Below, piece after piece: positions 6,001 to 43,426 of a stretch of DNA of 64,000 bases. Origin of the DNA: Botryllus schlosseri. Its lineage: Eukaryota. How positions within the stretch are numbered: position 1 is the stretch's first letter; the number at the start of each line of letters is the position of its first letter. Location of the stretch: contig CM119374.1 in NCBI GenBank assembly GCA_051294905.1, positions 8,432,001 through 8,496,000 of the forward strand. Direction: 5' to 3'. The translations under genes were made by a program, and so were the position numbers. The notes under the pieces are model-generated. The model ran no database searches and was not told the DNA's origin. It was given only the letters and a program-made list of their open reading frames with translations.

Positions 6001-9000
6001 AGTTTAACATGTCAGTGAATAATAGGTAAATCAAATAGTCGTAAAGACTTTGAAAATTAGGCCGTTACCTCTCATCCCGTTCTTGCTATCGTCATCCTCT
6101 TTGGTACCATTAGACTTCTTTCCTTTTCCACCCATTCGCCTTTTCATACATCCTAAAGTGAGGTCAGATCTATGGTGCAATACTCCTACTAGATCAGGGG
6201 TTCTCAAAGGGTGGGCCATGGCCCACTGGTGAGCCACAAGAGCATTTGAGGTGGGCCACAGAGCTATTTTGAAAATTTTAGAAATAATTTAAGTTTAGTA
6301 ATATTTGTTGTGTTAATCGCTAAAAAATATATTCGTATTAGTTGATTGATGAGACGTAGTGGTAGGCCTACGTATGGAGTCAGCATTTCAAGTCGAAAAT
6401 GGGAGGCAGAAACGGCGGCTTTTTCCACTGGCTATGGCTAACAGCAACTAAAATAATTTCGCGCATATAATACCTGGAAGGTAATGCTGAACGAACCAAA
6501 TGTTCCGGCAGGGTCATAATGTCGTATGCCGTTGAAAAGGGTGTGCAATAAAATCGGAATGAAGTGTAATTGATGTATAGATTTACTGTACTTCGGCAGG
6601 TCGTATTATTGTAAGTCAAAAATGGCCATAATTGCAAATTATTAGCAACTTCTGGTGTAGGTATACTGCACCACCACAACGAATAGTAATGGATTGTGGA
6701 TTCAGCGGAGCGCAATAATATTTAGAGTCTGCTTAAAATGTCATGCCTGGAAATCAATGTACATAATGTAAGAGTCACATGAGTTGATAGTATCACTTGA
6801 TTGAATATTCCGACAGCGCAACTTCAGTGGGTTCAGTACGTGACATTGTACGTATACATTGTATCACTCTTAGCGAAAAGAGTGGTTATACACACCCCAA
6901 AAGGTGGTACACGAAAACAGAACTTACGTAACCCTGCCGGTGTGTATGACCAGAATCCACCCCATTCCTTGCGGTGTATATCGGATATTTCACCCTAGCC
7001 ATTATAATTGATTGGGGCGTAATTTCAGTATATACACCCTACTTGAAATCCTGCATCTTCTTCCAAATTGCACGCTATTGCAAATAAACTTTCTTGATTG
7101 CATATATTCGATATCAATTGAACCATAATAACATAAAATGGAAACATATTTCGTGAAATAACATAAACAGAGATCCCAGCGACGGAGAAAAAAATTCACT
7201 GAAAATACTGCTCGAAGAACATTGCCCATGTAATATTGGGAAGTCGTCTCCTCCAGGTTTCCGCAAAACACTCTTGTACGGCGAAGGCTGAGTCACTATC
7301 TTCAGCAAGAACTTGTGGCATCATCCTGAAATCAAAATGCATATTCACAACCCAATTAACAGGCACATGCAAACATGCATAACTTAATGAAAGAGCACAA
7401 AAATAGAAGCCATTACAAAGTATAAATATTTTCAAAAAGTACTTACCAAAAAAATCAGATGTTACACTTGCTAAGGAATTGCAGCACAGACTGTGGTCCG
7501 ATAGGGTGAACTTACCGCTATAGGAAACATGTTCACACACGATCACTTTATGTGTGGCCAATTAGGCATCGACAAGATGGAAATTTATGGATAGTTTTCA
7601 TGAAAACCGCATGTAACAGGCAGACTTGGACAACTAGAAAACGTTCCCTTTTTCCAAATTGGATTGGAATTAAATTACAACTACAAGTTTTTTTTTCGAA
7701 TTAGAGTAGAATTAAAATTATAGCTACACAGTTGGAAATTAGATTAAAATTATAATTCTTGCTGACAGTTTTTTTCAAATTAGATTAGAATTAGAATTAC
7801 TGAAATCGCGAAAAGTTGAATCAAACTGCGTTATTATCAAATCATAGTTCATCTTATGAGCATGAGAATAGCAAATGTCTGTACACTGTACAGTATGGGT
7901 GTTCGAAAATGACTTTTTCTTTCAAATTCTACTGGCTACTTGATAAAATTGTTAGGTTACCTAATTCAAGCCTGCACACCAAATTTGGTTCGATTCCAAC
8001 CAGTAGCCGCATTGCTACAGGAGAAGAAAGTTGAAGATTCTTCCTATTAGTAGGGTCACATGGCATTAGTAATTTTATATTAGTCGCGAAGATTCATATA
8101 GCAATTTTCAAAGTAGAAACTTCCGAAAAACTGCTTACCATACTTGACTATTTTTCCGACATTCCGTATTCTACTTCCACTTGACGTAGTTTTGACTTGT
8201 ATTGGGAACTGTTGCATCTACTTGTAATCGAGTATAAATTGACGGCGGTATTTCTACATCGACTTGAGTAGCAACGCTAGTAACTTTGACCATCTCTGCT
8301 TTGGTTTACCTCATATATGCGACTACGAAAGTTGACATCAGGTGTCGTTAACAAAGTTGTAATACCTGCTGGCTTGATAACGAGTCTTTCAGTTTTCGCA
8401 GCATACTCCTAAACTCGGTTAGTTCCTGTGATATAATTTTGCTCTTGCAGCATGCAGTCTTTAAGCAGCATCCTAAAATATGAAGAAAATCAGAGAAAGA
8501 GATGCATGGACTTGATTTAAATTTGACTACTTGGTATAATCCAAAACACGAAACGTTTCCTAGTTGGGCAATATTGACTTTCAGAATGGATCCAAAGCGA
8601 CCGCAGATACAGGTCTGATTAGAAAACCTTGACTTGCCTTATACATGGAAATTAGCAAATTAGCTGGATGCTAATGATTACCTTGCAATATGTGCTGTTT
8701 GATAACGATCCATCATTGTTTCGCAGCATACGGTTTTACGGTTCAATGCGATGTCGACTTGGTTGAAATGCCCTGACATGATCTTGTATAGTGGCATCCT
8801 AAAATTGAAAAAAATAACCATGAGGTATAAACGTTTAGTTGACAATTTGGATTGGATTCTAAACTCCTAAAGGGATCGCCAGACAGGACGCCTATTGCCG
8901 AAAACCTAACCTATAGCCGAAGCGCATCGGTTTTCGGCTATCGACAGGCTTTCGGCTGGCTTTCGGCTTTCCGCTTCATTGGTGTGTATCGGACCGCGTT

Positions 9001-26068: not shown

Positions 26069-27372
26069 CAAGTAGGGATGATGTGAACGTGAGGTTCACG
26101 TTCGCGTTCTGTGTGTGAACCTCGGAAAATTTGAGGTTCGCGTTCACAACAGAACCTTGGTAGGTTCTGCACTGTGAACCTTTTTCATATATTGCAATTT
26201 TCACTTCATTATAACATCTTTGGTTCAAATTTATTGACTTTCAACTGCGGGCCACTTGCTATGCATGGAGCTGGCAGCATAAACATTCAACACTAAACGA
26301 GCATGCCCTTGACAATCTCAAAAAATATTGTTACAAAAGTTTGCTCGAAATATCCAGCTTTCCGTTTGTGCATATTTAGTGTCTCTGTGCTGTGAGCTTG
26401 ACCCGCAATCACATGACATCAAGAGTGAAATACACTGTATTTTGTCAGCGAATGATCCTAATTCAACCAATCAATGAGATTGATTTCGTCTTCTGATGTA
26501 AAAATCTAGCAGGCGTACGGGGTCAATCTTGACTAAATATGTATACTGTATCATAAAAACCAGATCCGTGCGACTGAGATGTTGGCTATACTGCTGTATA
26601 ACTTGTTAATGGGGTAATATCGGTAGCAAGTATAGAAACCCATTTTACACTCTGCTCAATATCCGTGTGGCAATACTCAGACGCCGAATATACATTGTCC
26701 GATCAGGTCGAAATTTATGGCAAAGCGACGCAAGATACCGATTTTATGGGATTATTATATCATTTGATTGCCTCAGTTGATACATTTGGCGACGTTTAAA
26801 ACGTCAATATGTATACTTAAGTACTGAGCTATTATGAGGCCCCGAGTCGTCGCTCTATGCAGTACCGGTACTTATGCATTGCTCTAAAGCTCGGTTTTTA
26901 ATTTGTTTTACCTGTAGAATAGATCTCGGTAATAAGAAAAGAAGTCCTGTAATATTGAGATGATTTATGTTGTCATGTTGTAGAATAAGGTGTGTCAATT
27001 ATAGTCAAATAGGTTAGATAAAGTCTATGAAATAAGTTATGCACCAGGCTTCTATAATTGCCGTTTTAGCGAGTGAAGCCATGTGATTTGACAGCGACAT
27101 TGTTATGGAGAGTATATTGTAGAGGCCTTTGCTCAGATAGGAAGTTTATTCACTCAGTCGTACTCAACAATCCAGCAGCGACGAGACCAAACACGAAAAA
27201 GACACACCAATAAAAACTTTTTTCCCCACCACCGCAAATGGTGGGTTTTGTTCTACATATATGTTCTGCATGTGTCGTAAGGTGACCGGAGTCGCGATTA
27301 CATTTATTTCTATATTAAAAAAAAAAAAAAAAAAAAAAATTTTGTGGTAAACTAACAATTATAACAATTTTG

Positions 27373-27394
27373 TGGAGTATTTGGTTGTATTAAG
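27373..27394 (+). other. Spliced-leader sequence at the 5' end of the Tx1 element
   Basis: TGGAGTATTTGGTTGTATTAAG followed by GT matches 22 of the 24 nt of the stolidobranch SL as I recall it. The motif recurs at 32899 and 32955. Confidence 0.7.
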
Positions 27395-28007
27395 GTTCGC
27401 GTAAGTATATAACGGCTATTTACAGGAGCAAGGAACGAACCGGAGCCGCTGTGGCGATAGTTTATACTTACCGTAAACGTTAGTTAATTTTGCAGTACCT
27501 AGGCTAGAATTTTCACTTAGGCTATTTTTCTCCTTCATATTTTCTCCTTTTCATCGACGGATTTCTACTTCTACTTCGGGTCTCCTTCAGACTCAAACCT
27601 CCTCCCTCCTTGGGCCTGACTCGTCTTCGTGAGTCAGGTCTAAAGGAGTCTGTTCCTACCTCCACTAGAGTTTGACTCGTCTTCGTGAGTCAACTCTAGT
27701 CGGAGTCTTTTCTCTTCAAGTCTTGACTCTCTCTCTCGAGTCAAGACTTGTCGAGTCTTTTCTTCTCTCTCGCGCCTCTCCCTTGGGCGACGAGAGACTG
27801 TCTAGCCTTAATTAACAACACGCTACGACACTGTCTAGACAGTGATCGTACGATCTTCCTGCTGTACTGAAACTGCAGTGTCGCCTTTAGCAAAGCGCGC
27901 AGAAAACGCCTCCAAAAACGCTCTATTAAGCGACAGTACAGCTTCGAATTAAAAAGAACGCAGTCTGTAGGCTAGCCCTCAAGCAACAGCAACTTGGCAA
28001 TACACAG

Positions 28008-29255
28008 ATGGCGTACGCAAGTGCACTACTAAACCAAAACAGAAACAGAATAACATATGGCTACAGGCCGCGATCCCTGGATATAGCTGCACCTCTAGGA
28101 AGCAATGCGGTAGACATCATTGACGCAATAACCAAACATCCACTCTTGAAAGAACGAAAGGATACAATAGAATCCATCTTCCAAATAGGAAGATCAACCT
28201 TCAACCTTACCTTCCATACAGAATCCCCTGTAGAAAGCCTGTTAGAAACCTTCCTTCAAGCTACCGAAGAAGGCATAGCAACAGCCACCGGCACATTGCA
28301 CCTTCATAAACCACAATTACCAGCGGTGCAAATCAACATAAGGGCTGTGCCGACAGAAGTAGACAACGAAGAAATAGAGCAAACAATCAACAGGCTTGGA
28401 TGCGGTACAATAAGAACAATCAAACACATCTACCACAGGGGAACCCAAATACACAATGGATACAGACAGGTAACCATCGATAGATACGTGCCTGGGAAAA
28501 TACCACCCTTCCTATATTTAGGCAGAGCGCCCTGCAAGATCTACCTACCTGCAGCCGAAGAGATAAACAGATGTTACAGATGTCTGAGAACAGGGTATAC
28601 CGCAGCAGACTGTCCAAATGAAACGGCCTGCCTACTCTGCAAAGAATACGGCCATAAAAGAGACCAATGTCCAAAAAACAGAAGTCCAGAGGATGAAATG
28701 CAGCTCTCCAACACAAACCCAGGGGAAGAACAAACACAGCCTGAAAATGAACAACAACAACAAACACAGAGCCAACCACCTATAGATAGCCAAAACATCA
28801 TTGAGAACTCTGAGGCCGAGAACTCTGCGGACGAAAAAGAAGATCTACAAGAAGAACCACATGACTTCTTTAACCTAGCAGACAAGACCCCGCCTACACC
28901 AGAAAACTCAGAACTAGATACAACAATAAGACCCGGAGAGGAAACAGAACTCAACAGCGAAAATGAACAAAATAACACAACAGATGAGGAACTGCAAATA
29001 ATAACAAGCGACGAAGAGAAACAACAAGACGCAGAAATAACCCTAACCCAAAAAAAGTCGAAAACAATAAAAAGCCGAACAGGCCAAACGGCAACCATAA
29101 CAAGGAATTGGGAAAGATGAAACTTCACCGCACAGGAATTCTTTAACGCACCCTCACCAAACAAAAGACAACAAAGCGACCGTAGCCCCACGACACAAAA
29201 CGAAAGCTCTGCAAGAAGGAAATTACTGAAAGCAGACATCGAACTGAAAAAGTAG
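28008..29255 (+). CDS. Tx1 ORF1p (RRM-like region, two zinc knuckles, acidic tail); premature TGA at 29118-29120
   Basis: CYRCLRTGYTAADC and CLLCKEYGHKRDQC knuckles. The frame stays open past the TGA to a TAG at 29253-29255, just before ORF2. Confidence 0.85.
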
Positions 29256-29280
29256 CCAGCCCCTGTCCTGTCTAATCCTA

Positions 29281-32200
29281 ATGGCGATGAATATCATATC
29301 CCTAAATGCCAATGGAATGGGAACACATTGGGTAAAAATGAAAAATTTACTCAGATGCGAAAAGAATTGGAATATTATTTGTATCCAAGAAACGCACAGA
29401 GCAGACACAGAGAAAATAGAAAAATGGGCACAACAGAATGACTTACTTTATTATCCAAATCACATTACTGTAGGACAAAATTGGACGGACATGGACGAAA
29501 ACAAAAAACACTACTACAGAGGCACTGGGATATTCGCCAGAAAGGACTTAAAAAATAAATACCACATAAAACACCAGATAGTAAGACAGGACAGGATACA
29601 GACACTACGACTAACCGATAAAGAAACAACCGACATCGCTACCCTATACAATGTGTATGGACCCAGCGATGTCGGAAAATACCAAACTGACTTCTACCGA
29701 GAATTAACATGTCATATAGAAAATAACACCCCTGAGAGCGCGATTATCTGTGGCGACTTTAATGTCGTCACAGATAAGAAAGACTCTAAGAACATCGACA
29801 ATTTCAAACTTACGCCTGCTGCTAAAATATGGAAGACCTTCATAGAAACGAATAAGATCAGAGACATATGGCGTTGGCGAAACCCAAATAAAAAACTATA
29901 TACAGTAATGAAAGCGCATCAATCCCGAAGAGTAGATAGAACCTACGCCTCGGAAAACCTACTCCCGCGGGTGAAAAGAAGCGAATACAAACTCAACAAC
30001 GTAGCTGACCATATATTCATGCAGAAAACACAGGTAGTCGAACCACTGAACATCGCATGGGGAAAACCACTATGGAAAAACGACATCAGACTCTACTCTG
30101 ACGAAACCTTGTACAAAAAAATAAAAATAACCCTTAAAAAATGCGCGAAGAAGAAACATAGCTTTGAAAACGTGTACCAATGGTGGGATTATTTAAAGAA
30201 AGAACTAACCAAACATAGAGGAAAGAAGAAAGATCAACATCCTCAGAGGAAATATAAACCGAATACAAAACAATGTAACTATGGCAGACGAAGCCATAAA
30301 ACAGATAAAGGAACTCAAAAAAGATCGAGAATGACAAACTCTGAGACATAGATGCACGCTTGACAAACTGAGACATAGATGCACGCTTTATAAAATGAGA
30401 GACATAGAGGAGAATGAAAAACCAACGAGATATTTCTTCACAAAAATAGCCCAGCGAAAGCAAAGCAAAATGATTGCAGCAGTTCTAAACCAACGGGGCA
30501 AAGAACTTACAACCAAAGAAGAAATCATCCAAGAGGTTTATGGATTCTACAACAATCTATGGGGGAAATCTCCCAGTGAGAATCCCCGCCTCCAAGAAGA
30601 ATATGCTGCAGAAATTGCGGACATAGAGGCAACCGAACAAGAACGAAAAGACCTCGAAACGCAAATAGACGAGACTGAGATCAAAACGATCCTAAATAAA
30701 ATGGAAAGCGGAAAGACCCCAGGGTCTGACGGGCTCTCCAAAGAATTTTACCAAACCTACTGGTCAATCCTCAAGAAAGACCTACTAGAGGTGATTAATA
30801 ACGCCTACTGCTTTGGAGGCTTGTGTCAAACATGGATGGAGGGCACAACTACCGTAATCTACAAAAAAGGAGAGCCAAAACTTTTAAAAAACTGGAGGCC
30901 AATAACCTTATTAAACACAGATTATAAAATACTAACCAGCATCTTGGCGGCAAGATTGAAACCCATACTCCCAAATTTTATTCTTGGAACACAAAAATGC
31001 GCTATTCGCGGACGACATATAACAGACATACTAAGAAATACTCAGGCAACATTTGAACACGCAACGGAAAGAAAACGAGAACTACTTATTGTAAACTTGG
31101 ACCAGGAAAAAGCTTTTGACACGATTAATCACAAATATCTCTACAGTATACTCGAAAACTACAGACTCCCCAAACCCTTCGTCCAACTGATAAAAAACAT
31201 ATACAACTCCGCAAAAAGCAGAATTCTAGTAAATGGCGCCCTAACAGATCCCATCAACATCAAAAGGGGGATAAGGCAGGGGTGTCCACTGAGCATGTGT
31301 TTATATGCCATCAGCTGTGACCCCCTGGCCAGAAAAATAACGAAAAACGAAAAAATAAGACCTTTCAAAATAGGCAGCGAAAGTATAAAAATACAACAGT
31401 ACGCCGATGATATCACGTGCTACCTTGGGAGAGAGGAGGACATCGATGCCGTATTCGAAGAATTCCAAAAATATGAACGGGCAACCGGGCAAAAATTAAA
31501 TCCAGAAAAAACAGAAATATTGCACATCAATTCGAGAACAGGAGCTAGAACAGGAAAATTCGAGAATCAAAAAAAAGAACGGATTAAAATATTGGGCCAA
31601 TACTTCGGAAAAAACCAATACAATGAAACCTGGACCGAAAACAGACTAAAAATACTACGAACCCTGATGGCCTACAGGCACAGAAAACTGACCTGGATGG
31701 GAAAAAAGGCCATCTTGAACTCCCTGGCAACAACAAAAATTCTGTACAATGCCCGAGTTATACCACCGAGTAAAGAAGATCAAAAAGAACTCGAAAAAAT
31801 ATATTTTAAATTCTTATGGCATCCCCATAAAATGGAGGCAATATCACGAAAAACGCTGATCGCCGAAAGAGAGAAAGGAGGACTCAGAATCCCAGATATA
31901 GAGTCACGCATAAGAGCAATAGAACTCGAAAAAATCGCAACGTTAAAAAATCTGGAAAAACCAACCGAAATATGGCATAAATATGCCATATATGAGGTCG
32001 GAACAAAAATAAAAGCTATACGGCCCAGTCTCTATAACAACAACGAGAGACACAAATATCCTACACCGAAAAGATGGACAGAAAGTATAGACTTGGCGAA
32101 AAAAATCGGATGGGAGGAAGAAGAGTGGAAAGAGAGTTCCCACAAAGAACTGTATAAAGAAATAAAAAATCTCAAAGAAAACGAGATAGAATTCCGAACA

Positions 32201-32740
32201 CAACACGGAAAGAAAATAAAAATGACAAAAATAACCAAAACCAAATGTTTTGGGAAAAACATGATAACTAATAGTGAAATGATCATAAACTATCGAGTAG
32301 CACATGACGGGTATATATTTGGACAGAAAAAAAGAATACGGAACTTAACAGAAGACAAAAATGGCAGGAAATTACTTCTGAACTGCAAATTTTGTAACTC
32401 GAGCAATGATTGCGCAAAACATATATTCACTGAATGCAAATACATCGCAAAATTGAAAAGGAAAATCCAAAAAACGCTAGGACTCGAACTAGACAACGAC
32501 TTAATAATGTACAATACCGGAAGAAAAAAAATCAACTGGATCATTGCATCGATCATGAAAAAGGCGATATTAAACCTGAAGATCGCTCTCGACATTGACA
32601 ATAAAAAAATAGAAAACGAAGGATTGGAGATGAAAATCCTACGAAAAATCAAAAAACGACTAGAAAGCCTAGATAACAACAAACAGGTGACCCAACTAGT
32701 CAAAAAAATAGAGAAAAGACTAGATAGAATAGGAAAATAA
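29281..32740 (+). pseudogene. Tx1 ORF2p (APE endonuclease, RT, C-terminal CCHC), frameshifted near 30240-30395
   Basis: IISLNANG, CIQETH, ICGDFN, RVDRTY, DH; KTPGSDGL, WRPITLLNTDYKIL, DQEKAFD, RQGCPLS, QYADD; CKFCNSSNDCAKHIFTEC. An approximately 27-bp tandem duplication lies at 30341-30395. Confidence 0.93.
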
Positions 32741-32898
32741 TAGCGAAGTGAAAAAAAAGGGCCAAAAAATGGGGGGAAAATGAAGATCAAAAACTCGGAA
32801 AAGACGTGCCACAGAAGAACCAACCTTCTCCTGTGAATGGAAATATCAGGAGGACACAAGACCCACACCCAATGTCAACATAGAGTATCTGAGTTGAG

Positions 32899-32923
32899 AT
32901 TGGAGTATTTGGTTGTAATGAGG
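32899..32923 (+). other. SL-like motif inside the Tx1 3' UTR
   Basis: ATTGGAGTATTTGGTTGTA (19 nt identical to the SL 5' part) followed by ATGAGG instead of TTAAGG. Confidence 0.7.
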
Positions 32924-32924
32924 C

Positions 32925-32955
32925 ACTACGCTTGATCTTAGCCATAAAGGCCGAG
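32925..32955 (-). ncRNA. U2: Antisense fragment of U2 snRNA (about nt 8-37)
   Basis: The reverse complement CTCGGCCTTTATGGCTAAGATCAAGCGTAGT differs from canonical U2 CTCGGCCTTTTGGCTAAGATCAAGTGTAGT by one insertion and one substitution. Confidence 0.88.
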
Positions 32956-33404
32956 GAGTATTTGGTTGTATTAAGGTAAGCATCGGCCTGGCTGATGCGG
33001 AACCCTTGTGGTACAACCGATACTTCCAATCACTTGTACACCTAGGAGAAGTATGGCCGTCAGGCCTTCATGCTCCGCACCGGGATCTGTGTCAGCTTGA
33101 CTGGCCAGTATCCCAGTCACAAGTATGGTGGCGGCGGGACAAGCCTCCGCAGACGCCCCCAGCCAAAGCCTGCTTGTGACAACTGTTTGCACCAACAAGT
33201 GACGAAACTTATTGGAGAAAAAAGCAAACAGGAAGCAACCTTTTGGGAGCTCTTGGGTCCTTTCGACCCAAGAGTGACCTATTAAGGCGCTTGTGGCAAT
33301 AGTCCGGTGGTGTAGTGCCACATGGGCTGCCGCAAGCGTAACGGGGTGGAGGTTTACTGCGGTTCCTCCAGGTTACCCCTAAAAAAAAAAAAAAAAAAAA
33401 AAAA
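32930..33404 (+). mobile_element. 475-bp non-autonomous poly(A) retroelement (SINE-like) with a U2-antisense/SL head
   Basis: Perfect 17-bp TSD TTGTAATGAGGCACTAC (32913-32929, 33405-33421). (A)24 tail. 3' hairpin GTAAC..TGGAGG/CCTCCA..GTTAC. SL GGAGTATTTGGTTGTATTAAG followed by GTAAG at 32955-32980. Confidence 0.88.
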
Positions 33405-33670
33405 TTGTAATGAGGCACTACTGCCCGAAAAGGCGGAAACACAAAAATAAATAAGAGAAAAATAAAGAAGAACCTGTCACACTTGCCTAAGCACTGTTCA
33501 AACCCCTCAGTTAGAAAGGAAAAGGAAAAAAAAATAAAAAATAAAAAAGAAGAACCTCAAAACCCCCAGACCGGAGCAGGCACCTATACCAGATGTAGAG
33601 AGGGCCTGCGATGGTCTGGGTATCCGGAGAGCCGCAAAAAAAAAAAAAAAAAAATATTTATTTCTAGATT

Positions 33671-33691
33671 GTACTCGCTTCGGCGGTACAC

Positions 33692-33727
<36 letters not shown>

Positions 33728-33734
33728 GGCCCCT
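33671..33734 (+). ncRNA. U6: U6 snRNA 5' portion (nt 1-64), interrupted
   Basis: GTACTCGCTTCGGCGGTACACATACTAAAATTGGAACGATACAGAGAAGATTAGCATGGCCCCT includes the ACAGAGA box and compensatory 5' stem changes. I found no U6 3' half in the window. Confidence 0.95.
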
Positions 33735-36095
33735 ACCTGCGGTTCTTCTCTGTTGGTGTCCCGAATTTTGCGTCACTGAGCTTGTTGCAACCATGGCAAC
33801 CTGAGCTTGCAACCATGGCAACCTGAGATTGCGACCATGAAACCTTTGCGTGCAACCATGGGCATCAAAACAATGAGATTGCCCTCCTGATCTGGTAAGA
33901 CGGAGTCTGGATGGCTTTCAAGTCACATAGATATTTCTGCTCACGTCGCTACACCACCTATCTGAACGGCGTACGTGATTTATGAGTACACAATACGCAC
34001 ATAGAAGCGGAAATAGCGTTGTCAATTTCTACCTACCTGCCCGGGCAATTATAAAATAGAACCACTTTGAGGTAGTTGGAAAACTCTGCTACTTGAAGTA
34101 GAAGGAATTACTTTATTACTGGTCACCTCTATTGAGAACAAGGCGAAGTCATGCTGCCGTGGGCCGGCGGGAGAGGGTGGATAAAAATACGAAAAAAATA
34201 CTCCTCTTTCTGTTCTGGATCACACAGTCGCTGCCTACTTCTTTCATTGCATTCTAGATCAACCATTTCTGGGATCACTCGCAATATGTCACTATATTGT
34301 CTTATACCAAAATACTCACATTATTCTACTTGCTGCAAAGGACATCTCCCTGCGAATCCACTGCAGAATTTGAAAGCAAAATTATCTTCAAGTTTTATCA
34401 GAACACCATGATGGTCACAACGAATTGTAGAAATCAGTATTGCAATTTACAGACATTACTACCAAAACAATCACAGGAACGAAACGGAACTGAAGGCAGA
34501 AGCTTTCACATTCACAGTCTTAATATCAAAGCATAAAATGGTGCATGATTCAAATGCTCAGAGCCAGAGGTCAATTATTGCAATAACTGCAACAGCGTAC
34601 TGCAGTGTAGAGGAACTAAAATAACAATAACAAAGTAAACATTTAAAAAACTAGAATGGACACACCAATCGGAGTCAATTATTGCAATATATGCGATAAC
34701 AAATGAAGCACTTTCAGGAAATTGAAACACAGGAAATTGAAACATGACTATAAGCTAGTCAACTTGGATGTTACAGTTGTAACGCAAGAGTGAAACATCA
34801 AATACAATACTAAAATATATCATATTGAAAGCACCAGGCACAGCAAATAGGTCCAGACATCTATCAGCACAGTATAAATGAAGAAATTGGCAGTACAGAA
34901 AAATCGTTACGAAGATGCAAAGTAAAATTCACAACATGATTAGCAGAAGCCCACAGTTGAAAATATTATTGTTATTGTAATAAAACATTGACTGCAAAGG
35001 AATCATGATGCATCAAGTAATAGAAAGCATTATTTTCGTGCCGCGCGTCTGCCATACCCTTTCTTTTTCAATTCATTCAGCCAAACATCATGACTGACAT
35101 TGGACGTTGCAGCACAAAACTGATTACCGTAAAATTGTTTATGGCTATCAGTATTCCTGGGACTGCCACATTTGCTGCATATAGGTGGTCCGGTTCTCGG
35201 CGCATATTTTTTACGAGAGCACATGCCAGCAGTTTCTTCGACAGAACGCCTCTTCCTGTAAGATAGCGTGCTGCGAGGAATCGATGAGGCTGGAGGCGCA
35301 GCAGCAGATCGTATCTTAGCAGTGCCAAAAGTATTGTCTGACATATTTGGTACAAACTTCTCGAGCTGGACTTTTGGAGTAGGTAGCGCTGCAGGTTTCC
35401 CTTGGCCCTGTGGTAAATCATCAGTAGCTGTTGCTGCATCATGAATGCGAATCCCCTGGCGCAGAACAGCTCTTTCCATTCGTGTCTCGTCATTTTTATA
35501 CCTAAAGAAGAATATTGAATCACAAAAAGGACTTATAATAAGTCTAATAATTATTCATACCAGTTCAGAATTGTCCTCTGATTAAGTTCCGGCAATTGTA
35601 TGCTTGTATTTGTCATAATAGTGCTATTGTTCAGTACACACTTCCGGATATTCTTGTATGCAGTTCCCACATGTGACCAACGGTCTTTACTACCTGGAAT
35701 CCATACGACAGTTAATGACGAATTGGATTGCGACTTCGGTAAGCACAGGATTTCATACTGAGAAATAGATCGCAAAGTTTTGATACGGTTTGCTCCACGT
35801 ATCTATTGCAGTCAGGTCGCTGGGCAGGTCCAGAGCTGCTACCGTAAAAGCACCTACAAAATAGAAATATAAAAATATTAGGATATATATGTATAACTTG
35901 AAGATTACAAAATAACTTACTTTTTTGTAGCTACTACACCCGGTGTTGCATCAGATTTTGAAGACTTGAATCTTCCACCTGGATTTTAGCCTTTCTGTAC
36001 ATAGGTGCAAATGTAGTAGGCTGTTGATCATAATGGTGAAGTCTGGACCACAACGTTAATATACGTTCGGCGTCTCCTTCACTCAATGAGCCATT
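33735..36095 (-). mobile_element. Dada-U6-like DNA transposon remnant (terminus plus transposase C-terminal exons)
   Basis: Starts at the U6 break. TCTTCTCTGT (33744-33753) is the inverted repeat of the U6 ACAGAGAAGA (33711-33720). Approximately 22-bp subterminal repeats follow. Minus-strand fragments ERILTLWSRLHHYDQQP, RCFYGSSSGPAQRPDCNRYVE, IQLPELNQRTILNWY and ICSKCGSPRNTDSHKQFYGNQFC resemble Dada/DUF6729-type proteins as I recall them. Confidence 0.7.
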
Positions 36096-36099
36096 ACAA

Positions 36100-37150
36100 T
36101 TGCGGAAAGTGATAAGAGAGTCAGCGAAATATGAATTGGGAAGTAAAATTCTCGACATAAACAAGAGGCTATACTCCAATTCCTTACCGCATAGACATAA
36201 ATGCACTGAAGAATGGAATAGCATATTAACAACAGTCCAATCAATGAATTGGACTGAAGAACAATGGATAGAAGCTACACACAAAAAGACCTATCAAGAA
36301 TTGAAAAAACAAAATGAATCTCCGACCACAATCCCTTTATAAAATGGACGAGCCGTTAATTGGAAAAAAGTACAAGAAAGTAACGGAAGTAGAAACGTGA
36401 TTAAGAACAAAGAAAGAGTGAACAACATTAGAATTGCAACGAGAGGGTACTTCTTTGGTGAAGACAAGAGGAGATTATGCCTACTCGACATAGGGATACA
36501 GAACAGAGTGAATATGAACTGTAAATTTTGTAATATCAGACAAGATAATATAAAGCACATAATTCTATCATGTCCGTTCACACAAAAAAATTTTCAAAAC
36601 TTTAGAAGACTCATTCAAACTCAAAATTTAACTTTAGATAACATCATGTATAATGAGGACCTAAAAGATAAAAATGATTGGACTATAATAAGCATTATAA
36701 AAATGGAACTAATTAAAACTAAATTAGGCCTTGATAAATGCAATCAATCCATATTGTCGAGTAAAACGACAGAAAAAATCCTCACACAGAAAATACTAAA
36801 AAGCTAATAAAAAGAATAAGAAAATTTGTGAATTCAAAAGAAGAGCAACTATTCAAAAACGAGTTGTGCTTCTTGCAAGAGGAGCGCATCTGAATTTTTT
36901 CAATAAGGAAAAAAGACAAGGTCTCATCAATATCGATGAAGCGAAGAAGGACTTGGGCGAATGACGACAAACGGAGACGAAAGGAGGACGAGAACGATGA
37001 ACAAACAAGAAAGAAGACAAGGACGACGAAAGAATGACGAACGACAGCGACGAATCGAAAGAACGGAACGGAGGAAGAAAGGCCACCCGAAGAGAAACGG
37101 AGAAACCTTTTGTGAATTGATTGTGAATTTGAATGTATGTTACAAATACA
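36100..37150 (+). mobile_element. 5'-truncated fragment of a second, diverged Tx1 family
   Basis: ORFs 36100-36342 and 36397-36807 are in the same frame with one TAA between them. They align by eye with the C-terminus of the ORF2 above (AKYELGSKI vs AIYEVGTKI; CKFCNIRQDNIKHIILSC vs CKFCNSSNDCAKHIFTEC). A purine-rich 3' UTR follows. The right boundary is approximate. Confidence 0.8.
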
Positions 37151-37934
37151 GAAATTTTCATGCAATGTCGCTCATTTTTGGATACAAGGAGTACAGATTT
37201 TTTCTTCTTCTACAATTTGATTCTCGCAATACATATTTTCTGTCAATTTCATGCATTTTATTTTGACTACATTTGGGTTCGCCGTGGCAGCCCGTAAAAA
37301 AAATTCAACAAAAATATGTGCATTTTCCATTATGTTGATATTTTGCCGAAATAAAATATTACAAACAAAAAAATTGTATCATAAAAACCAAATCCGTGCG
37401 ATTGGGGCGTTGGCTACTGCTGTATACCTTGTTAGTGGGGTAATATCTGTAGCAAGTATAGAAATCCGTTTCACACTGTGCTCAATATCAACGTAGCAAT
37501 ACTCAGACGTCGAATACATTGTCCGGTCTGGCCTAGACCGTTAAGACGCAAGCATATATTCCCTTGCAAGTACTTGTGGAAATTGTTGGCAAAGCGACGG
37601 ATGGGATTAATATATAATTTGATTGTCCCAAATATGTATTTCAGCATTGTGGCATTATGTGGCCCGAGTTGTCGCTAGGTATCGTGTAGTGTACATTAAT
37701 ATAGGCTATCATTTCACTGAGATGTAGGGTCGGAATTAGCAAAATGACGTAATGATGTTCACGTTCGCGTTCACTCGAACCTGAGCTTTTCAGAGGTTCA
37801 CACCATCCCTGCTTGATAATAAAGTATTCCAACGAGAAGCAATGGCACGAGGCAACATTTTTGATTCCGTTGACTGGTCCGGCCCGCGAGCGATTTCATG
37901 ACTTGGATCCAGCCCGCGATGCAATTGGAGATTG

Positions 37935-39282: not shown

Positions 39283-42200
39283 AGAATTAATTAATAATTA
39301 ATTAATTACTTCAACTTAACCTAACTTCTGAACTGACGCATCACTGCTGTTAATGCCTGCGAAACGATCTGGATATATCGCACCTGGACGTACCCGCCGT
39401 GGGACCAAGCGGATGACCCCAGAGGACTCGTCAACTCCGACCACACAGGAACACCAAAGAGAAGATATTTCTCAACATGGCGCCTGTGCAACACCGAACT
39501 GTGGCTCACAAAACAGCTCTGCTGCAAAAGAGAAAAAGAAGAGACACAGATGGAGTAAAGAAGAGTATAAAGAAATAATGAGATGTTACTTCTTAGCCAA
39601 ATTTGAAAACTCGGCAGGAGTAACCGAAGGAACTTTTCAAAAATGGAAAGAGAGAACGAACAACTCTCCAACCATGACTGCCAATACCCTGGCAACAATG
39701 AGACGTTGTGTAATAAAAAATAAAAAATTATCTGAACAAGAACTCGCAGAAATCGAGGGAGAAATGTGTAACAAAAACATAGAAAACTCTGAGGCAATGG
39801 AACTGCAATTCGGCCAAGATGACCTGAACCCACAACAATCACTTGATGACCCGAACATCGCAGAAGTAGAATTACAAAATACCACCGGGCACCCGAATGA
39901 ATCAACAACACCTAACGATGGCGACATAGACACGGAATTAGAATTGGAGATCAAAAATCAAATCATCGACCGCATGAAATCCACATTGAATGTAAATGAC
40001 AGAGTGCAGTTACCTGACTTACAAATTACAAAGAAACTGAAAACTGATATTGCAGTAGCGAACAAAATTTTGACAGAAACCATACTACCTGCAACTCTAA
40101 ATGACAAACAAGGAGAAAGACCACAATGTCCCTTGACAACAATCAACAACCTCATTTACAGCACTGCGGCAGTTATCTCAGAAAGGCACTGCAAAATACC
40201 AAGAACTGTCAACAAAAAAAGGGGAAGGCATACGCCAGCTTGGCAACGCAGAATTGAAAACAAAATCGCAAAACTAAGGTGTGACGTTGCGATACTCTCA
40301 GAACTAAAAAAAGGAAATGTTTCCCGCAAAGTAAAAAATAAAGTAAAAAGAATAGAACTGGAGCACCAAACCAAACTGCAGTCAACAGAAAAAGTGACAA
40401 TGTTGCAAGAAGAATTAAAAATGAAAATATGCACCAAAGCACAACGATTGAAACGATATAAAAAACGAGAAACACAATATCGCCAAAATTTGTTATTTGC
40501 TCGCAAACCTGGACAATTTTTTCGAATGATGAAACAAAAGTCAAATCAAAAAATTACCAGCAGCAAAATACCAGCCACTGCAGATGTGGAATCATTTTGG
40601 AAGAAATTATGGGAAACCAAAAAATTGCACAACTCAAATGCAAATTGGATACAAGACCTCCACACTGACCATCTACAAACACCAGAACAACAATGGTCAG
40701 AAATCACAAAACAAGAAATCAAGGAGGCCCTAAAGAGTTCACTGAACTGGAAAGCAGCTGGTCCTGACCAGATCAAAAACTTTTGGCTAAAAAAACTAAC
40801 TGCAACACATAATTACCTAGCGGTGACCTACAATGAGCTTTTATCCTCAACCAGCTCGCACGAGATCCCAGCCTGGTTCACACAAGGGATCACCTATCTT
40901 ATTCCAAAAAATGAAAACACCAGGGACCCCAAGAACTACAGGCCAATATAACATGCCTGACAACCATGTACAAAACACTGACCAAAATCCTGGCAAAACG
41001 AAGCTACAAACACCTAGAAAATCTTCTACCGCCTGAGCAGAAAGGATGCAAGGAAGGCGCCCTTGGCTTTAAGGACCACCTGCTCCTTGACAAAACCATT
41101 CTTGAAAACTGCAAGAGGAGACACACTAACCTCAGCATGGCATGGATAGATTACAAAAAAGCTTTCGATTCAGTCCCTCACACGTGGATACTGAAAACAA
41201 TGCGTATGTACAAAATGAATCCGATCATCATCAGATTTATTGAAAATTCAATGAAAAATTGGCATACCAAACTGTTGATCAAACATGACCAAGGCGAAAC
41301 AGAAACCTGTACAATTCAGATATGCAATGGTATCTTCCAAGGCGACTCATTCTCACCACTTCTATTCTGCCTCAGCTTAGCTCCACTCAGTGAGTTGCTG
41401 AGAAAAAATGAAACAGGATACGTGATGAAAAAAGCAGCAAACTCTGAAGGTCAAAAGATTCATCACCTTTTGTTCATGGATGATCTGAAACTGTATGCGA
41501 AATCCGACACGGACCTGAATAACCAAATGAAAATTGTTCATGAGTTTTCGGAAGATATAAAAATGAAATTTGGCTTGGATAAATGCTCAAAACTTACCAT
41601 ACGACGCGGAAGAGCCACCAGCACTCGCGACATGAACTTCAAAATGGACGAAACCATAACAGAATTGAATGCCGAAGATCACTATAAATATCTAGGGATC
41701 TGTGAAAGCGACAACATTAAACATGCTGCAATGAAATCAAGTCTAAAAAAAGAATACATTAGCAGGCTCAAGTCAATTCTCAAAACTGAACTCAATTCCA
41801 AAAACAAAATCAATGCCATAAACAGTCTTGCAGTGCCTGTCTTGAGATATAGCTTTGGTGTGGTGAACTGGCGTAAAGATGAAATTAAAAAATTGGACAC
41901 AAAGACGAGAAAACTGATGACAATGCACCACATGCATCACCCAAAATCTGATACACAAAGACTGTACATCCCCAGAAAAAAATGTGGTCGAGGACTACAA
42001 GAAATTGAACAAACCTTCAAAACAGAAATCATCGGCTTGTCACAGTACATCAACAACAGCGATAACATTTACTGCAAACTCATTGCACAGGAAGACAAAC
42101 AGCGCAAAACAAAATCTCTGAGCTATCGTCACGACAAGTACGCCAGAGAAGTCAACTTGGAAACAGCTAACCTGTACACTGCAGAAAACACTGTTGCTAA

Positions 42201-43426
42201 ACCCACAACAATAGCAAAAGCAGCACGAGTCCGATACAAAAATGCAACGCTGAAAATGAGAGAAACGATATGGGAGTCGATGCCTCTTCATGGACAGCAC
42301 AAGAAGTTAACTTCACAGCCCCATGTAGACGAGCTTTCATGGACCTGGCTATCCAGCTCTGGCCTGAAACCGGCAAGCGAAGGATTCATTTTCGCAGCAC
42401 AAGACCAATCGCTTCCTACAAAATACTATCGCAAAAGAATTCTGAAGCAAAACACGGACGGCAAATGCAGAATGTGCCACAACCAAAATGAAACTGTAGC
42501 ACATCTCATGTCCGGCTGTGGTGCACTTGCAGCTACCGAATACACATGGAGACACAATAGGATTGGTCACTACATTCATCTTGAATTATGCAAACATTTC
42601 AACATCACCACTTCGACAAAAAATTGGTACGATTACAGCCCAGCACCAGTGACAGAAAACGAACAAGTAAAAATTCTGTGGGATGTACCAGTTATAACTG
42701 ACCGCGAAATCAGGAGCAACCGCCCGGATATAATCGTCAAACTAAAAAAGAAAAGAGAATGCTTATTCATTGAACTGGCTGTCCCAGCTGATCACAACCT
42801 ACTGCAAAAAGAATCAGAAAAATACTCCAAATACGCAGACCTCAAAATGGAATGTGAGAAAATGTGGCGATGCAAAATAAACATTGTACCGATAGTCATT
42901 GGTGCTACAGGGGTCGTGAGCAAAAAACTCATGAGACATATCCAACAAATTCCGGGTAACGTTCGATTCGACATGATCCAAAAGATCACATTATTGGGCA
43001 CTGTGCACATTCTTCGGAAGGCCTTGAATGCACCACTGGACTAAAATTACGCTGGTGAATCACAGCATAATTTCTGTAATTTCGATTCTTCATCTTCAAT
43101 CATCTCTACCTCTGCTCTGTAACCCTTGCCAATTCTTCATCTGCTGCAATTCTGTAATCTGACTTCTCCGTGTATTGCATAGGAATAACAATTTGAATGT
43201 ATTACTGAAATTTTAAAAATTTACTCCAATCTCGCCATTTTCCTTTGGGGGCAGGTTGCTCCCCGGATTATGTGTGTATCTACCAGTTTTACTGTGAATA
43301 TAGAATATAATAATAATAATAATAATAATTTTAAAAATTTACTCCAATCTCGCCATTTTCCTTTGGGGGCAGGTTGCTCCCCGGATTATGTGTGTATCTA
43401 CCAGTTTTACTGTGAATAAAGAGAAT
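39283..43426 (+). mobile_element. Full-length R4/Dong-clade non-LTR retrotransposon (restriction-like endonuclease)
   Basis: 12-bp TSD AATAATTAAATA (39271-39282, 43427-43438). (TAA)n tail. One long ORF. Confidence 0.88.
39353..43044 (+). pseudogene. R4/Dong polyprotein (Myb-like N-terminus, RT, CCHC, REL), one 2-bp frameshift near 40950
   Basis: RHRWSKEEYKEIMRCY, WKAAGPD, YRPI/TCLTTMYK, WIDYKKAFDSVPH, GIFQGDSFSP, LFMDDLKL, CRMCHNQNETVAHLMSGC, RHN, NRPDII, IELAVP, KYSKY. Confidence 0.92.

What the first reader, a model, noticed from the sequence alone, without database searches (positions are those of the whole stretch)
27317..27460. Tx1 LINE whose 5' end begins with the spliced leader
Seen: inside the TSD the element starts (A)23, a 33-nt linker with ATTTTGTGG twice, then TGGAGTATTTGGTTGTATTAAG followed by GT. 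Established: SL-gene-targeting retroelements exist (NeSL in nematodes, CRE/SLACS in trypanosomes), but they use restriction-like endonucleases; Tx1 elements use APE and target other small-RNA genes. Inference: this Tx1 RNA was either trans-spliced or transcribed from an SL-gene promoter it normally sits in. The leading poly(A) suggests a tandem-array source. I know of no SL-linked Tx1 in chordates.
Basis: partly seen in the sequence, partly recalled or inferred. Interest (0 to 1): 0.8.

Follow-up and report, generated by a model that had tools for sequence, protein, structure and literature searches.

The report
Jumping gene headed by spliced leader
A 6.3-kb LINE retrotransposon in this sea-squirt genome carries, inside its own insertion scar, a copy of the short leader that the animal normally splices onto its mRNAs, and its whole family does the same, which ties a chordate jumping gene to the host's trans-splicing system.

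Summary
Window 27317-33654 is one retrotransposition event, flanked by a 15-nt target-site duplication matching at 14 of 15 positions. Inside it lie A23, a 33-nt unique linker, nt 5-25 of the 25-nt tunicate spliced leader (SL), GT, and then an L1/Tx1-group APE+RT LINE.

The motif is this species' SL. It equals the published chordate SL, and thousands of 5'-complete RNA reads show it directly after the template-switch oligo.

The SL head is family-wide. The LINE's conserved 5' splice module gives 51 genomic hits. Twenty-one have the SL 5-13 nt upstream. Twelve have another element's poly(A) abutting the same boundary, forming head-to-tail arrays. Four have the SL spliced exactly onto the module's acceptor.

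So the SL travelled in the LINE RNA. The window copy is an off-target insertion beside a U6 start.

I read the family as homing to the SL 3' boundary and being co-transcribed with a DNA-encoded SL. The A23 plus linker would be template-jump additions. A trans-splicing origin is not excluded.

Tx1 membership is plausible but unproven: ORF2 fits Tx1 and L1 about equally, while ORF1 is RRM+CCHC like Tx1.

The sampled RNA shows this copy silent.

The scan has noted SL-headed elements elsewhere in this genome before.

The parts
27302..27316 (+). 5' copy of the target-site duplication (ATTTATTTCTATATT)
   Evidence: 14/15 match to 33656-33670, at the insertion borders
27317..27339 (+). A23 at the 5' end of the insertion, inside the TSD. 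Read as the poly(A) tail of a second template copied after a template jump.
   Evidence: Parallel case in L035: U6(9-96)+A18+U1(1-27) upstream of the SL inside a 14-nt TSD.
27340..27372 (+). 33-nt linker of unknown source
   Evidence: Unique in the 495-Mb genome at up to 3 mismatches. No source found in any fetched locus.
27374..27394 (+). Spliced leader, nt 5-25 of the 25-nt SL (the first four nt, GATT, are missing)
   Evidence: Identical to the published chordate SL. RNA reads show template-switch oligo + GATT + this sequence. 331 exact genomic copies.
27395..27400 (+). Leader GTTCGC between the SL and the splice module. It is a short variant of the family's 5-13-nt leader.
   Evidence: Junction table of 21 copies
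27401..27425 (+). Splice module: 5' splice site GTAAGTAT, branch-like ATAAC, and acceptor TTTACAG
   Evidence: Conserved in all subfamilies read. Four other copies have the SL joined exactly after this acceptor.
27426..28007 (+). Rest of the 5'UTR, with short hairpin repeats
   Evidence: 77% identity to the L035 5'UTR
28008..29120 (+). ORF1 (370 aa), open
   Evidence: Aligns with the L035 ORF1 family, whose model is two RRMs + CCHC.
29281..30351 (+). ORF2 part 1: APE endonuclease
   Evidence: Pfam Exo_endo_phos, E 1e-11. 59% identity to the L035 ORF2.
30395..32740 (+). ORF2 part 2: reverse transcriptase and C-terminal part, in a different frame from part 1. ORF2 is broken around 30330-30395.
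   Evidence: Pfam RVT_1, E 1e-36. 56% identity to the L035 ORF2. Frame reading.
32900..32922 (+). SL-like motif in the LINE 3'UTR (2 mismatches in the 19-nt core). It is conserved at the same place in two other copies.
   Evidence: L035 7626-7650 and 1519-1541.
32930..33405 (+). Nested later insertion, not part of the LINE. It consists of an antisense U2(7-38) piece, SL nt 5-25, an SL-RNA-like SINE body and A25. It is flanked by a 17-nt TSD (32913-32929 / 33406-33422) that lies in the 3'UTR SL-like motif.
   Evidence: 80-88% identity to L015, L019 and L027. U2 hit on the minus strand.
33423..33635 (+). LINE 3' tail, ending ..CCGGAGAGCCGC
   Evidence: Same tail in L035 and in the Logan contig L066
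33636..33654 (+). LINE poly(A), 19 nt
33656..33670 (+). 3' copy of the TSD
33671..33734 (+). Flank: U6 snRNA positions 1-62. The TSD ends at U6 position -1.
   Evidence: Rfam U6, 63 bits, E 1.5e-14

Best explanation
The segment 27317-33654 is one target-primed retrotransposition of an L1/Tx1-group LINE (APE endonuclease + RT). Its RNA template began with the host spliced leader.

The head is a heritable, DNA-encoded feature of the whole LINE family. It consists of the SL, a 5-13-nt leader that usually starts GT, and a 5' splice site / branch / acceptor module.

The family's preferred landing site is the 3' boundary of an SL sequence. A new copy lands between an SL and whatever follows it, usually the leader of an older copy. 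This builds head-to-tail arrays whose first member is preceded by the SL. Transcripts of such copies include the SL.

When such an RNA integrates elsewhere, as here next to a U6 start, the SL is carried along inside the new TSD.

After reaching the RNA's 5' end (SL nt 5), the reverse transcriptase jumped to other templates. That added the 33-nt linker and 23 A's before integration was completed.

The host splicing machinery still acts on the head: in some copies the SL is joined exactly to the module's acceptor.

Shown here: the SL's identity; the SL inside the TSD; the family-wide junction; the arrays; the spliced copies; template jumps in a sister copy.

Inferred: homing as the cause of the arrays; co-transcription as the source of the SL; template jumping as the source of A23 and the linker.
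For: SL identity:
- The motif equals the published chordate SL.
- SMART-type RNA reads show template-switch oligo + GATT + GGAGTATTTGG. The loose-end rows show about 340-3800 such reads each in X5 and X9, 238 in X7 and 4-9 in X8.

SL was in the RNA:
- It lies inside a 14/15 TSD here.
- In L035 it lies inside a 14-nt TSD together with U6, A18 and a U1 piece.
- In the five copies I could read, the SL starts at nt 1, 2, 2, 5 and 5, and the upstream flanks are unrelated.
- Only 2 of 21 copies have the complete 25-mer.

Family-wide head:
- 21 of 51 hits to the splice-module motif have the SL 5-13 nt upstream. About 11 of the 51 are expected by chance (reversed-pattern control: 4 + 7 hits). Seventeen of the 21 leaders start GT.

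Homing:
- At 12 distinct loci, a run of at least 8 A's abuts the leader within 2 nt of the SL boundary. All 12 lie in clusters on C3, C7 and C14.
- One run on C14 reads SL|leader at 22212003, then poly(A)|leader at 22218795, 22224509 and 22232425. Spacing is 5.7-7.9 kb and the leaders differ, so these are independent insertions at one boundary.
- On C14, SL|leader at 22184668 is followed 15.8 kb downstream by (A)nG|GTAAGCATCG, the start of the SL-RNA-like intron.

Splicing of the head:
- Four copies from three subfamilies have the SL joined exactly after the module's CAG (compared).

Element type:
- APE + RT.
- Best solved relative is human L1 ORF2p, E 8e-61.
- Best Swiss-Prot fold hit is Tx1 ORF2.
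Against: - The window copy and L035-1 are not at SL sites, so homing is at best a preference.
- Only 1 of about 73 SL|GTAAGCATCG junctions is occupied, against 12 of 33 LINE leaders. The target is therefore not simply 'any SL donor'.
- The position of the poly(A)|leader junctions varies by up to 3 nt. RT jumps from leader-ended RNAs onto poly(A) tails could also produce them.
- No SL gene promoter was seen upstream of any copy.
- SL heads also occur on an unrelated LINE clade and on gag/RT-RNase H elements. A general RNA-level mechanism such as trans-splicing explains that more simply.
- The RNA runs give essentially no depth over this LINE's ORFs, and no read joins the SL to its leader. An SL-headed LINE RNA has therefore not been observed.
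- The linker has no identifiable template.
Confidence: 0.5

Rival explanations
1. Trans-splicing origin and renewal. LINE pre-mRNAs, transcribed from any upstream start, are SL trans-spliced like ordinary ascidian mRNAs. Full-length reverse transcription then writes the SL into each new copy. Under this reading the SL is not a target remnant and the family does not home to SL DNA.
For: - SL heads with unrelated flanks occur on several unrelated retroelement families. These include a LINE with a different endonuclease N-terminus (..IGISETKL..) and a (TAA)n-associated LINE.
- 200 of 331 exact SL copies are followed by something other than GT.
- Four family copies have the SL joined exactly at the module's acceptor.
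- The SL start is ragged at nt 1-5, as expected for copied RNA ends.
Against: - At the common junction the SL is followed by GT in 17 of 21 copies. The following leader loosely resembles the start of the SL-RNA-like intron (10/13 with one gap). A spliced product should not contain intron bases.
- No source copy with an outron and AG acceptor at that position was seen.
- The 12 poly(A)|leader junctions and the multi-member arrays are not predicted.
- No SL-LINE RNA was seen in the reads.
Confidence: 0.3
2. Template-switch chimera. An ancestral LINE cDNA jumped from the LINE RNA's 5' end onto SL RNA, as in U6/L1 chimeras, and copied its first ~35 nt. The chimeric head was then inherited. The arrays arise from further end-to-end jumps onto poly(A) tails.
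For: - Template jumps are frequent in this family: U6+A18+U1 in L035, U1(1-47)+SL in L055/L056, and an antisense U2 piece in the nested insertion.
- GT plus intron-like bases follow the SL.
Against: - Jumps normally restart at the 3' end of the new template, so the whole SL RNA would be expected, not just its first ~35 nt.
- Arrays of four full-length, differently-led members spaced about 6 kb apart are too long for one cDNA.
Confidence: 0.1
3. The SL here is resident target DNA: this copy sits in an SL gene. Alternatively, the motif is a chance match or an assembly artefact.
Against: - The TSD encloses the SL, and the flanks are a unique sequence and a U6 start.
- The SL lacks its first four bases.
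- Chance expectation is 0.03 for 3 hits, and the reversed-pattern controls gave 0 hits genome-wide.
Confidence: 0.03

Closest known systems
NeSL-1 (nematodes) and SLACS/CZAR/CRE (trypanosomatids): SL-exon-specific non-LTR retrotransposons
   Same: A LINE physically and recurrently joined to the host spliced-leader sequence. Multicopy SL DNA is used as a safe landing site (PMC4640811).
   Different: - Those elements carry a restriction-like endonuclease after the RT and insert inside the SL exon of SL RNA genes.
- This element has an N-terminal APE endonuclease, and SLACS is only a weak, RT-only fold hit (rank 15).
- Its junction is at the last base of the SL, mostly next to its own older copies.
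- It also carries the SL to non-SL sites inside its TSD.
Tx1L, Keno and other Tx1-clade LINEs (APE-type, target-specific for transposons, U2, 5S, microsatellites)
   Same: - APE+RT ORF2. The top Swiss-Prot fold hit is Tx1 ORF2.
- ORF1 is RRM+CCHC and matches the Tx1 82-kDa ORF1.
- Insertion at one sequence boundary, tandem arrays, and association with small-RNA genes.
   Different: - No SL-linked Tx1 is reported in the papers searched.
- Clade membership is not shown by a tree.
- The target sequence is carried along in the RNA and reappears at off-target sites.
SL relics in retroposed genes of dinoflagellates ('mRNA recycling'; from my own knowledge, Slamovits and Keeling 2008, not read here)
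   Same: A DNA-encoded SL at the 5' end of a sequence that has passed through an RNA copy.
   Different: Those are cellular genes with decayed, stacked SL relics. Here an autonomous LINE family keeps an exact SL, a GT donor and a splice module as a fixed 5' head.
U6/L1 and other snRNA/L1 chimeric retrocopies of mammals (from my own knowledge)
   Same: Extra RNA-derived pieces upstream of the LINE inside a single TSD: U6, U1 and poly(A) in L035, and A23 plus linker here.
   Different: Here the added pieces sit upstream of a complete, SL-headed 5' end. The window's linker has no identifiable RNA source.

Membership tests
Tx1 clade of the L1 group (non-LTR retrotransposons) | ORF2 with an N-terminal APE-type endonuclease followed by RT | tested here: met
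   - Pfam Exo_endo_phos + RVT_1 in the window and in L035.
- Human L1 ORF2p E 8e-61 over EN+RT, against R2 at 1e-24.
Tx1 clade of the L1 group (non-LTR retrotransposons) | RT/ORF2 groups with Tx1L rather than with L1 proper | tested here: inconclusive
   Fold search of the L035 ORF2 model (pLDDT 87) gave Tx1 ORF2 P14381 at E 8e-60 and TM 0.74. L1 ORF2 proteins scored 2.5e-57 to 1e-54, and all hits have 19-20% identity. No reference sequences were available for a tree.
Tx1 clade of the L1 group (non-LTR retrotransposons) | ORF1 of the RRM + CCHC zinc-knuckle type, not the coiled-coil/RRM/CTD type of mammalian L1 (criterion taken from my own knowledge) | tested here: met
   - zf-CCHC in the L035 ORF1.
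- The model core is two RRM-like domains with pLDDT about 90.
- It matches RBM4/lark and the Tx1 82-kDa ORF1 P14380 (rank 9). No L1 ORF1p appears in the top 30.
- This architecture is not exclusive to Tx1.
Tx1 clade of the L1 group (non-LTR retrotransposons) | Sequence-specific insertion into a repeated target | tested here: inconclusive
   - The window copy and L035-1 lie at unrelated sites.
- At family level there are 12 poly(A)|leader junctions and one split SL unit at the SL 3' boundary.
SL-exon-targeting LINEs (NeSL, SLACS/CZAR/CRE) | Restriction-like endonuclease C-terminal to the RT | tested here: not met
   The endonuclease is an N-terminal APE.
SL-exon-targeting LINEs (NeSL, SLACS/CZAR/CRE) | Copies sit at a fixed position of SL RNA genes | tested here: not met
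   For this copy, the TSD encloses the SL and the flanks are a unique sequence and a U6 start. At family level the question is inconclusive.
Retrocopies of SL-bearing RNA (SL relics) | SL at the 5' end and poly(A) at the 3' end, both inside one TSD | tested here: met
   Window TSD and L035 TSD.
Retrocopies of SL-bearing RNA (SL relics) | SL joined where the source has an AG acceptor (that is, added by trans-splicing) | tested here: inconclusive
   Met for four spliced-type copies. For the common SL|leader junction, including the window's, no acceptor-bearing source was seen, and GT follows the SL.
Template-switch chimeric retrocopies (U6/L1 type) | Pieces of other cellular RNAs upstream of the LINE within the same TSD | tested here: inconclusive
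   Met in L035 with U6, A18 and U1. In the window only A23 and a linker without a known source are present.

The most novel reading that the evidence does not exclude
This LINE family has made the host spliced leader part of its own life cycle. It keeps a cis-encoded SL with a live GT donor and a branch/acceptor module as its 5' head.

It also keeps an SL-like motif in its 3'UTR. That motif may guide the RNP by base-pairing to SL DNA, so the element homes to the SL 3' boundary and is transcribed, or re-spliced, with an authentic SL cap structure.

If so, it would be the first APE-type, SL-homing, SL-capped LINE in a chordate. It would have evolved independently of the RLE-type NeSL/SLACS elements.
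Probability: 0.3. Interest if true: 0.85.

Novelty: new variant of a known kind. Interest (0 to 1): 0.7.

Why it matters
SL-linked retrotransposons were known only from nematodes and trypanosomatids, and only with restriction-like endonucleases. Here an L1/Tx1-type element of a chordate is tied to the SL in two ways: it lands at the SL boundary, and it carries the SL in its RNA.

This bears on three questions:
- How LINEs that lose upstream promoters on each jump obtain a defined, translatable 5' end.
- Whether the SL (its cap, and a possible promoter or translation role) can be exploited by parasites.
- How target specificity evolves in APE-type elements.

The TSD-bounded copies in this window and in L035 are clean natural experiments. 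They show full-length reverse transcription of an SL-headed RNA followed by template jumping.

In practice, hundreds of DNA-encoded SL copies will confound SL-based gene annotation and operon calling in this genome.

Tried and rejected
- **Source of the 33-nt linker.** It is unique in the genome at up to 3 mismatches. Only chance 11-13-mers turn up in the fetched loci. No explanation.
- **SL RNA in Rfam.** Only U6 reached the gathering threshold. At the E-value threshold a weak antisense U2 appeared as well.
- **Expression of this LINE.** Four RNA runs gave depth near 0 over 28050-32850, and no read joined the SL to the leader. The depth at 27374-27405 comes from unrelated SL-mRNAs that differ from 27395 onward. 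No conclusion on an SL-LINE RNA is possible.
- **Naming the clade from database names.** The 89 ORF2 relatives and 7 ORF1 relatives carry no informative names, and the Atlas clusters are unnamed.
- **Independent 5' ends from Logan contigs of relatives.** One contig (L066) starts without an SL. The others could not be fetched. Unitig assembly probably breaks at the shared SL, so this says nothing either way.
- **Reading more copies.** The own-genome searches are now also exhausted.
- **Families A and B as 'SL genes occupied by LINEs'.** Rejected. Downstream they encode gag and RT-RNase H, and their conserved upstream motif also precedes another ORF that has no SL.
- **U6's missing 3' part.** Not found in the window. 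No inverted repeats were found in 33600-37400.

Full report
**1. The observation**

Reading 27000-28200 confirms the layout. A23 lies at 27317-27339, and a 33-nt linker at 27340-27372 holds ATTTTGTGG twice. TGGAGTATTTGGTTGTATTAAG follows at 27373-27394, then GT.

Downstream lie ORF1 (28008-29120), an APE endonuclease ORF (29281-30351) and an RT ORF (30395-32740). The last two are in different frames, and stops and a small duplication lie between them. ORF2 is therefore broken.

The element ends in a 19-nt poly(A) at 33636-33654. A 15-nt duplication matching at 14 of 15 positions sits at 27302-27316 and 33656-33670, exactly at the two borders. Poly(A), linker and SL are therefore part of the inserted DNA.

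The 3' flank starts at position 1 of a U6 snRNA sequence (33671-33734; Rfam 63 bits).

**2. Is the motif the spliced leader?**

The 25-mer GATT + the window's 21-mer is the 'Chordata 1' SL consensus of a published compilation (PMC3795323, Table 1).

I laid four RNA-seq runs of the same species on 27250-33249. Their libraries carry a template-switch oligo, so they mark true 5' ends. The loose-end rows show about 340-3800 reads each in X5 and X9, 238 in X7 and 4-9 in X8, all reading oligo..ACATGGG + GATT and running into the 21-mer at both window copies of the motif. The reads then diverge into many different mRNAs.

Genome-wide the exact 21-mer occurs 331 times: 131 followed by GT, 32 by G then a non-T base, and 168 by a non-G base. 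The reversed-pattern controls gave 0 hits.

**3. What kind of element?**

An intact relative (L035; ORF1 440 aa, ORF2 1153 aa; 56-59% protein identity to the window's ORF2 pieces) served as proxy.

- Its ORF2 matches human L1 ORF2p over endonuclease and RT (E 8e-61), far better than R2 (1e-24).
- An AlphaFold model (pLDDT 87) finds Tx1 ORF2 first (E 8e-60). Mouse, loris and human L1 ORF2 follow closely, at 2.5e-57 to 1e-54.
- ORF1 has a CCHC knuckle. Its model core is two RRM-like domains. It matches RBM4/lark and the Tx1 82-kDa ORF1, and no L1 ORF1p appears in the top 30.

Conclusion: an L1-group APE LINE, Tx1-like by ORF1. Clade membership is not proven.

**4. Do other copies carry the SL?**

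I read five family copies:
- the window;
- L022/L034;
- L030/L035-1;
- L035-2, at 7931;
- L065.

All five have the SL at the 5' end. In four of them it is followed by a short leader and then a conserved module: GTRAGTA.., a CTAAC-like branch, and a TTTNCAG acceptor. In L035-1 the leader and module have been spliced out (see section 6).

As a less biased sample I searched the genome for the module alone. This gave 51 hits, against 11 for the reversed pattern. Twenty-one of them have the exact SL 3' end 5-13 nt upstream. Their leaders are homologous but differ by small indels, and 17 of 21 start GT.

**5. Was the SL in the RNA or in the target?**

Here the SL lies inside the TSD. In L035 a 14-nt TSD (1853-1866 and 7882-7895) encloses U6(9-96), A18, U1(1-27), the SL and the LINE.

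The upstream flanks of the five copies are unrelated, and the SL begins at nt 1, 2, 2, 5 and 5. Only 2 of the 21 copies have the complete 25-mer. These are the marks of a reverse-transcribed RNA end.

The L035 head also shows that this reverse transcriptase goes on to other templates after reaching the 5' end, including an oligoadenylated U6. That is my reading of the window's A23 and linker. The linker's template is unknown: it is unique in the genome.

**6. How did the RNA get the SL?**

Three sets of facts bear on this.

(a) *Splicing.* In four copies from three subfamilies the SL is joined exactly after the module's CAG. The host machinery therefore uses this acceptor, either in trans or in cis from the encoded SL donor.

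(b) *Arrays.* At 12 distinct loci a run of eight or more A's abuts the leader within 2 nt of the place where other copies have the SL. All 12 lie in clusters on C3, C7 and C14.
- On C14, an SL|leader junction at 22212003 is followed by poly(A)|leader junctions at 22218795, 22224509 and 22232425. The spacing is 5.7-7.9 kb and the leaders differ. These are independent full-length insertions at one boundary.
- An SL|leader junction at 22184668 is followed 15.8 kb downstream by (A)nG|GTAAGCATCG. That sequence is the start of the SL-RNA-like intron found in 72 places after the SL. In RNA it occurs as an unspliced transcript starting with GATT-SL. In its retroposed copies the SL pairs with a downstream anti-SL stretch, as in SL RNAs.

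(c) *Generality.* SL heads with unrelated flanks also occur on a LINE with a different endonuclease type, on a (TAA)n-associated LINE, and on gag/RT-RNase H elements.

I weigh (b), together with the GT and the loosely intron-like leader after the SL, as favouring a family that lands at the SL 3' boundary and is transcribed together with a DNA-encoded SL. Fact (c) keeps a trans-splicing origin alive.

Against simple 'SL donor targeting', only 1 of about 73 SL|GTAAGCATCG junctions is occupied, compared with 12 of 33 LINE leaders.

**7. Surroundings**

The LINE's 3'UTR holds an SL-like motif followed by G (32900-32922). The same motif sits at the same place in two other copies.

In the window that motif was later hit by a nested insertion (32930-33405), flanked by a 17-nt TSD. 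The insertion consists of an antisense U2(7-38) piece, SL nt 5-25, an SL-RNA-like SINE body and A25.

**8. Expression**

Depth over the ORFs is essentially zero, and no read joins the SL to this leader. This copy and its close kin are silent in the sampled reads (6-13% of each run). An SL-headed LINE RNA remains unobserved.

**9. Prior work in this scan**

SL-headed or SL-adjacent elements were noted before on other pieces of this genome, with both the homing and the 'copied capped RNA' readings. My counts support parts of each.

**10. Verdict**

This is a new variant of known kinds: SL-linked LINEs and SL relics.

Noticed in passing
window 32930-33405 (TSD 32913-32929 / 33406-33422): A nested retrocopy sits inside the LINE's 3'UTR. 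It consists of an antisense U2 snRNA piece (nt 7-38), SL nt 5-25, GT, a ~400-nt body and A25.

Its head folds like an SL RNA, with the SL paired to a downstream anti-SL stretch. There are 72 genomic copies of the SL|GTAAGCATCG junction. Unspliced RNA with this head is present in run X7.
   Followed up: partly
window 32900-32922; L035:7626-7650; L035:1519-1541: A conserved SL-like motif followed by G(T) lies about 250 nt (L035) to 750 nt (window, which includes the nested insertion) upstream of the poly(A), in the 3'UTR of three diverged copies of the LINE. Its function is unknown. In the window it was the target of the nested insertion.
   Followed up: partly
window 33671-33734: U6 snRNA positions 1-62 only. 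The LINE's TSD ends exactly at U6 position -1. The U6 3' part is not in the window.
   Followed up: partly
L031:1900-8915 (also L003, L006-L008, L010, L012-L014, L024, L028; related L002, L005, L009, L011, L029): Large families of gag + RT-RNase H elements. Their pol also matches the Tpt1/KptA RNA 2'-phosphotransferase domain.

The SL sits in their DNA directly after a conserved 73-nt promoter-like motif. That motif also precedes another ORF of the element, where no SL is present. A conserved CTGGACC..GGTC hairpin lies about 45 nt after the SL.
   Followed up: partly
L039, L046, L053, L054, L021; L040, L057, L058: Other LINE families begin with the SL next to unrelated flanks. In one, ORF2 starts ..IGISETKLKE, a different endonuclease type from the window's LINE. 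Another is found next to (TAA)n repeats in all three copies read.
   Followed up: partly
L055 and L056 (motif at 1500); L034:1775-1945: U1 snRNA recurs next to the SL. U1(1-47) is fused to SL nt 5-25 in two copies 105 kb apart. U1(1-27) is fused to the SL in L035. A full-length U1 lies 55 nt upstream of the SL-LINE head in L034.
   Followed up: no
L043/L044, L051/L052, L063: Tandem units of about 1.7-1.9 kb with a conserved upstream region. In them the SL is followed by TGGCTTGGC, with no GT donor. Their nature is unknown.
   Followed up: no
window 33091-33202: This core of the nested SINE-like body has a depth of about 320 per strand orientation in run X9. About 650-760 reads continue into different sequence on each side, so an abundant related RNA exists in that sample.
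   Followed up: no
window 39353-43044: A second LINE on the + strand, with RVT_1 and zf-RVT domains and no SL motif within 3 mismatches.
   Followed up: no
G000 C14:22.16-22.29 Mb and 24.02-24.27 Mb; C7:27.50-27.55 and 28.95-29.13 Mb; C13:23.79-23.83 Mb; C3:5.085-5.100 Mb: Copies of the LINE family are strongly clustered. All 12 poly(A)|leader junctions lie in the C3, C7 and C14 clusters, whereas SL|leader copies are spread over many chromosomes.
   Followed up: partly
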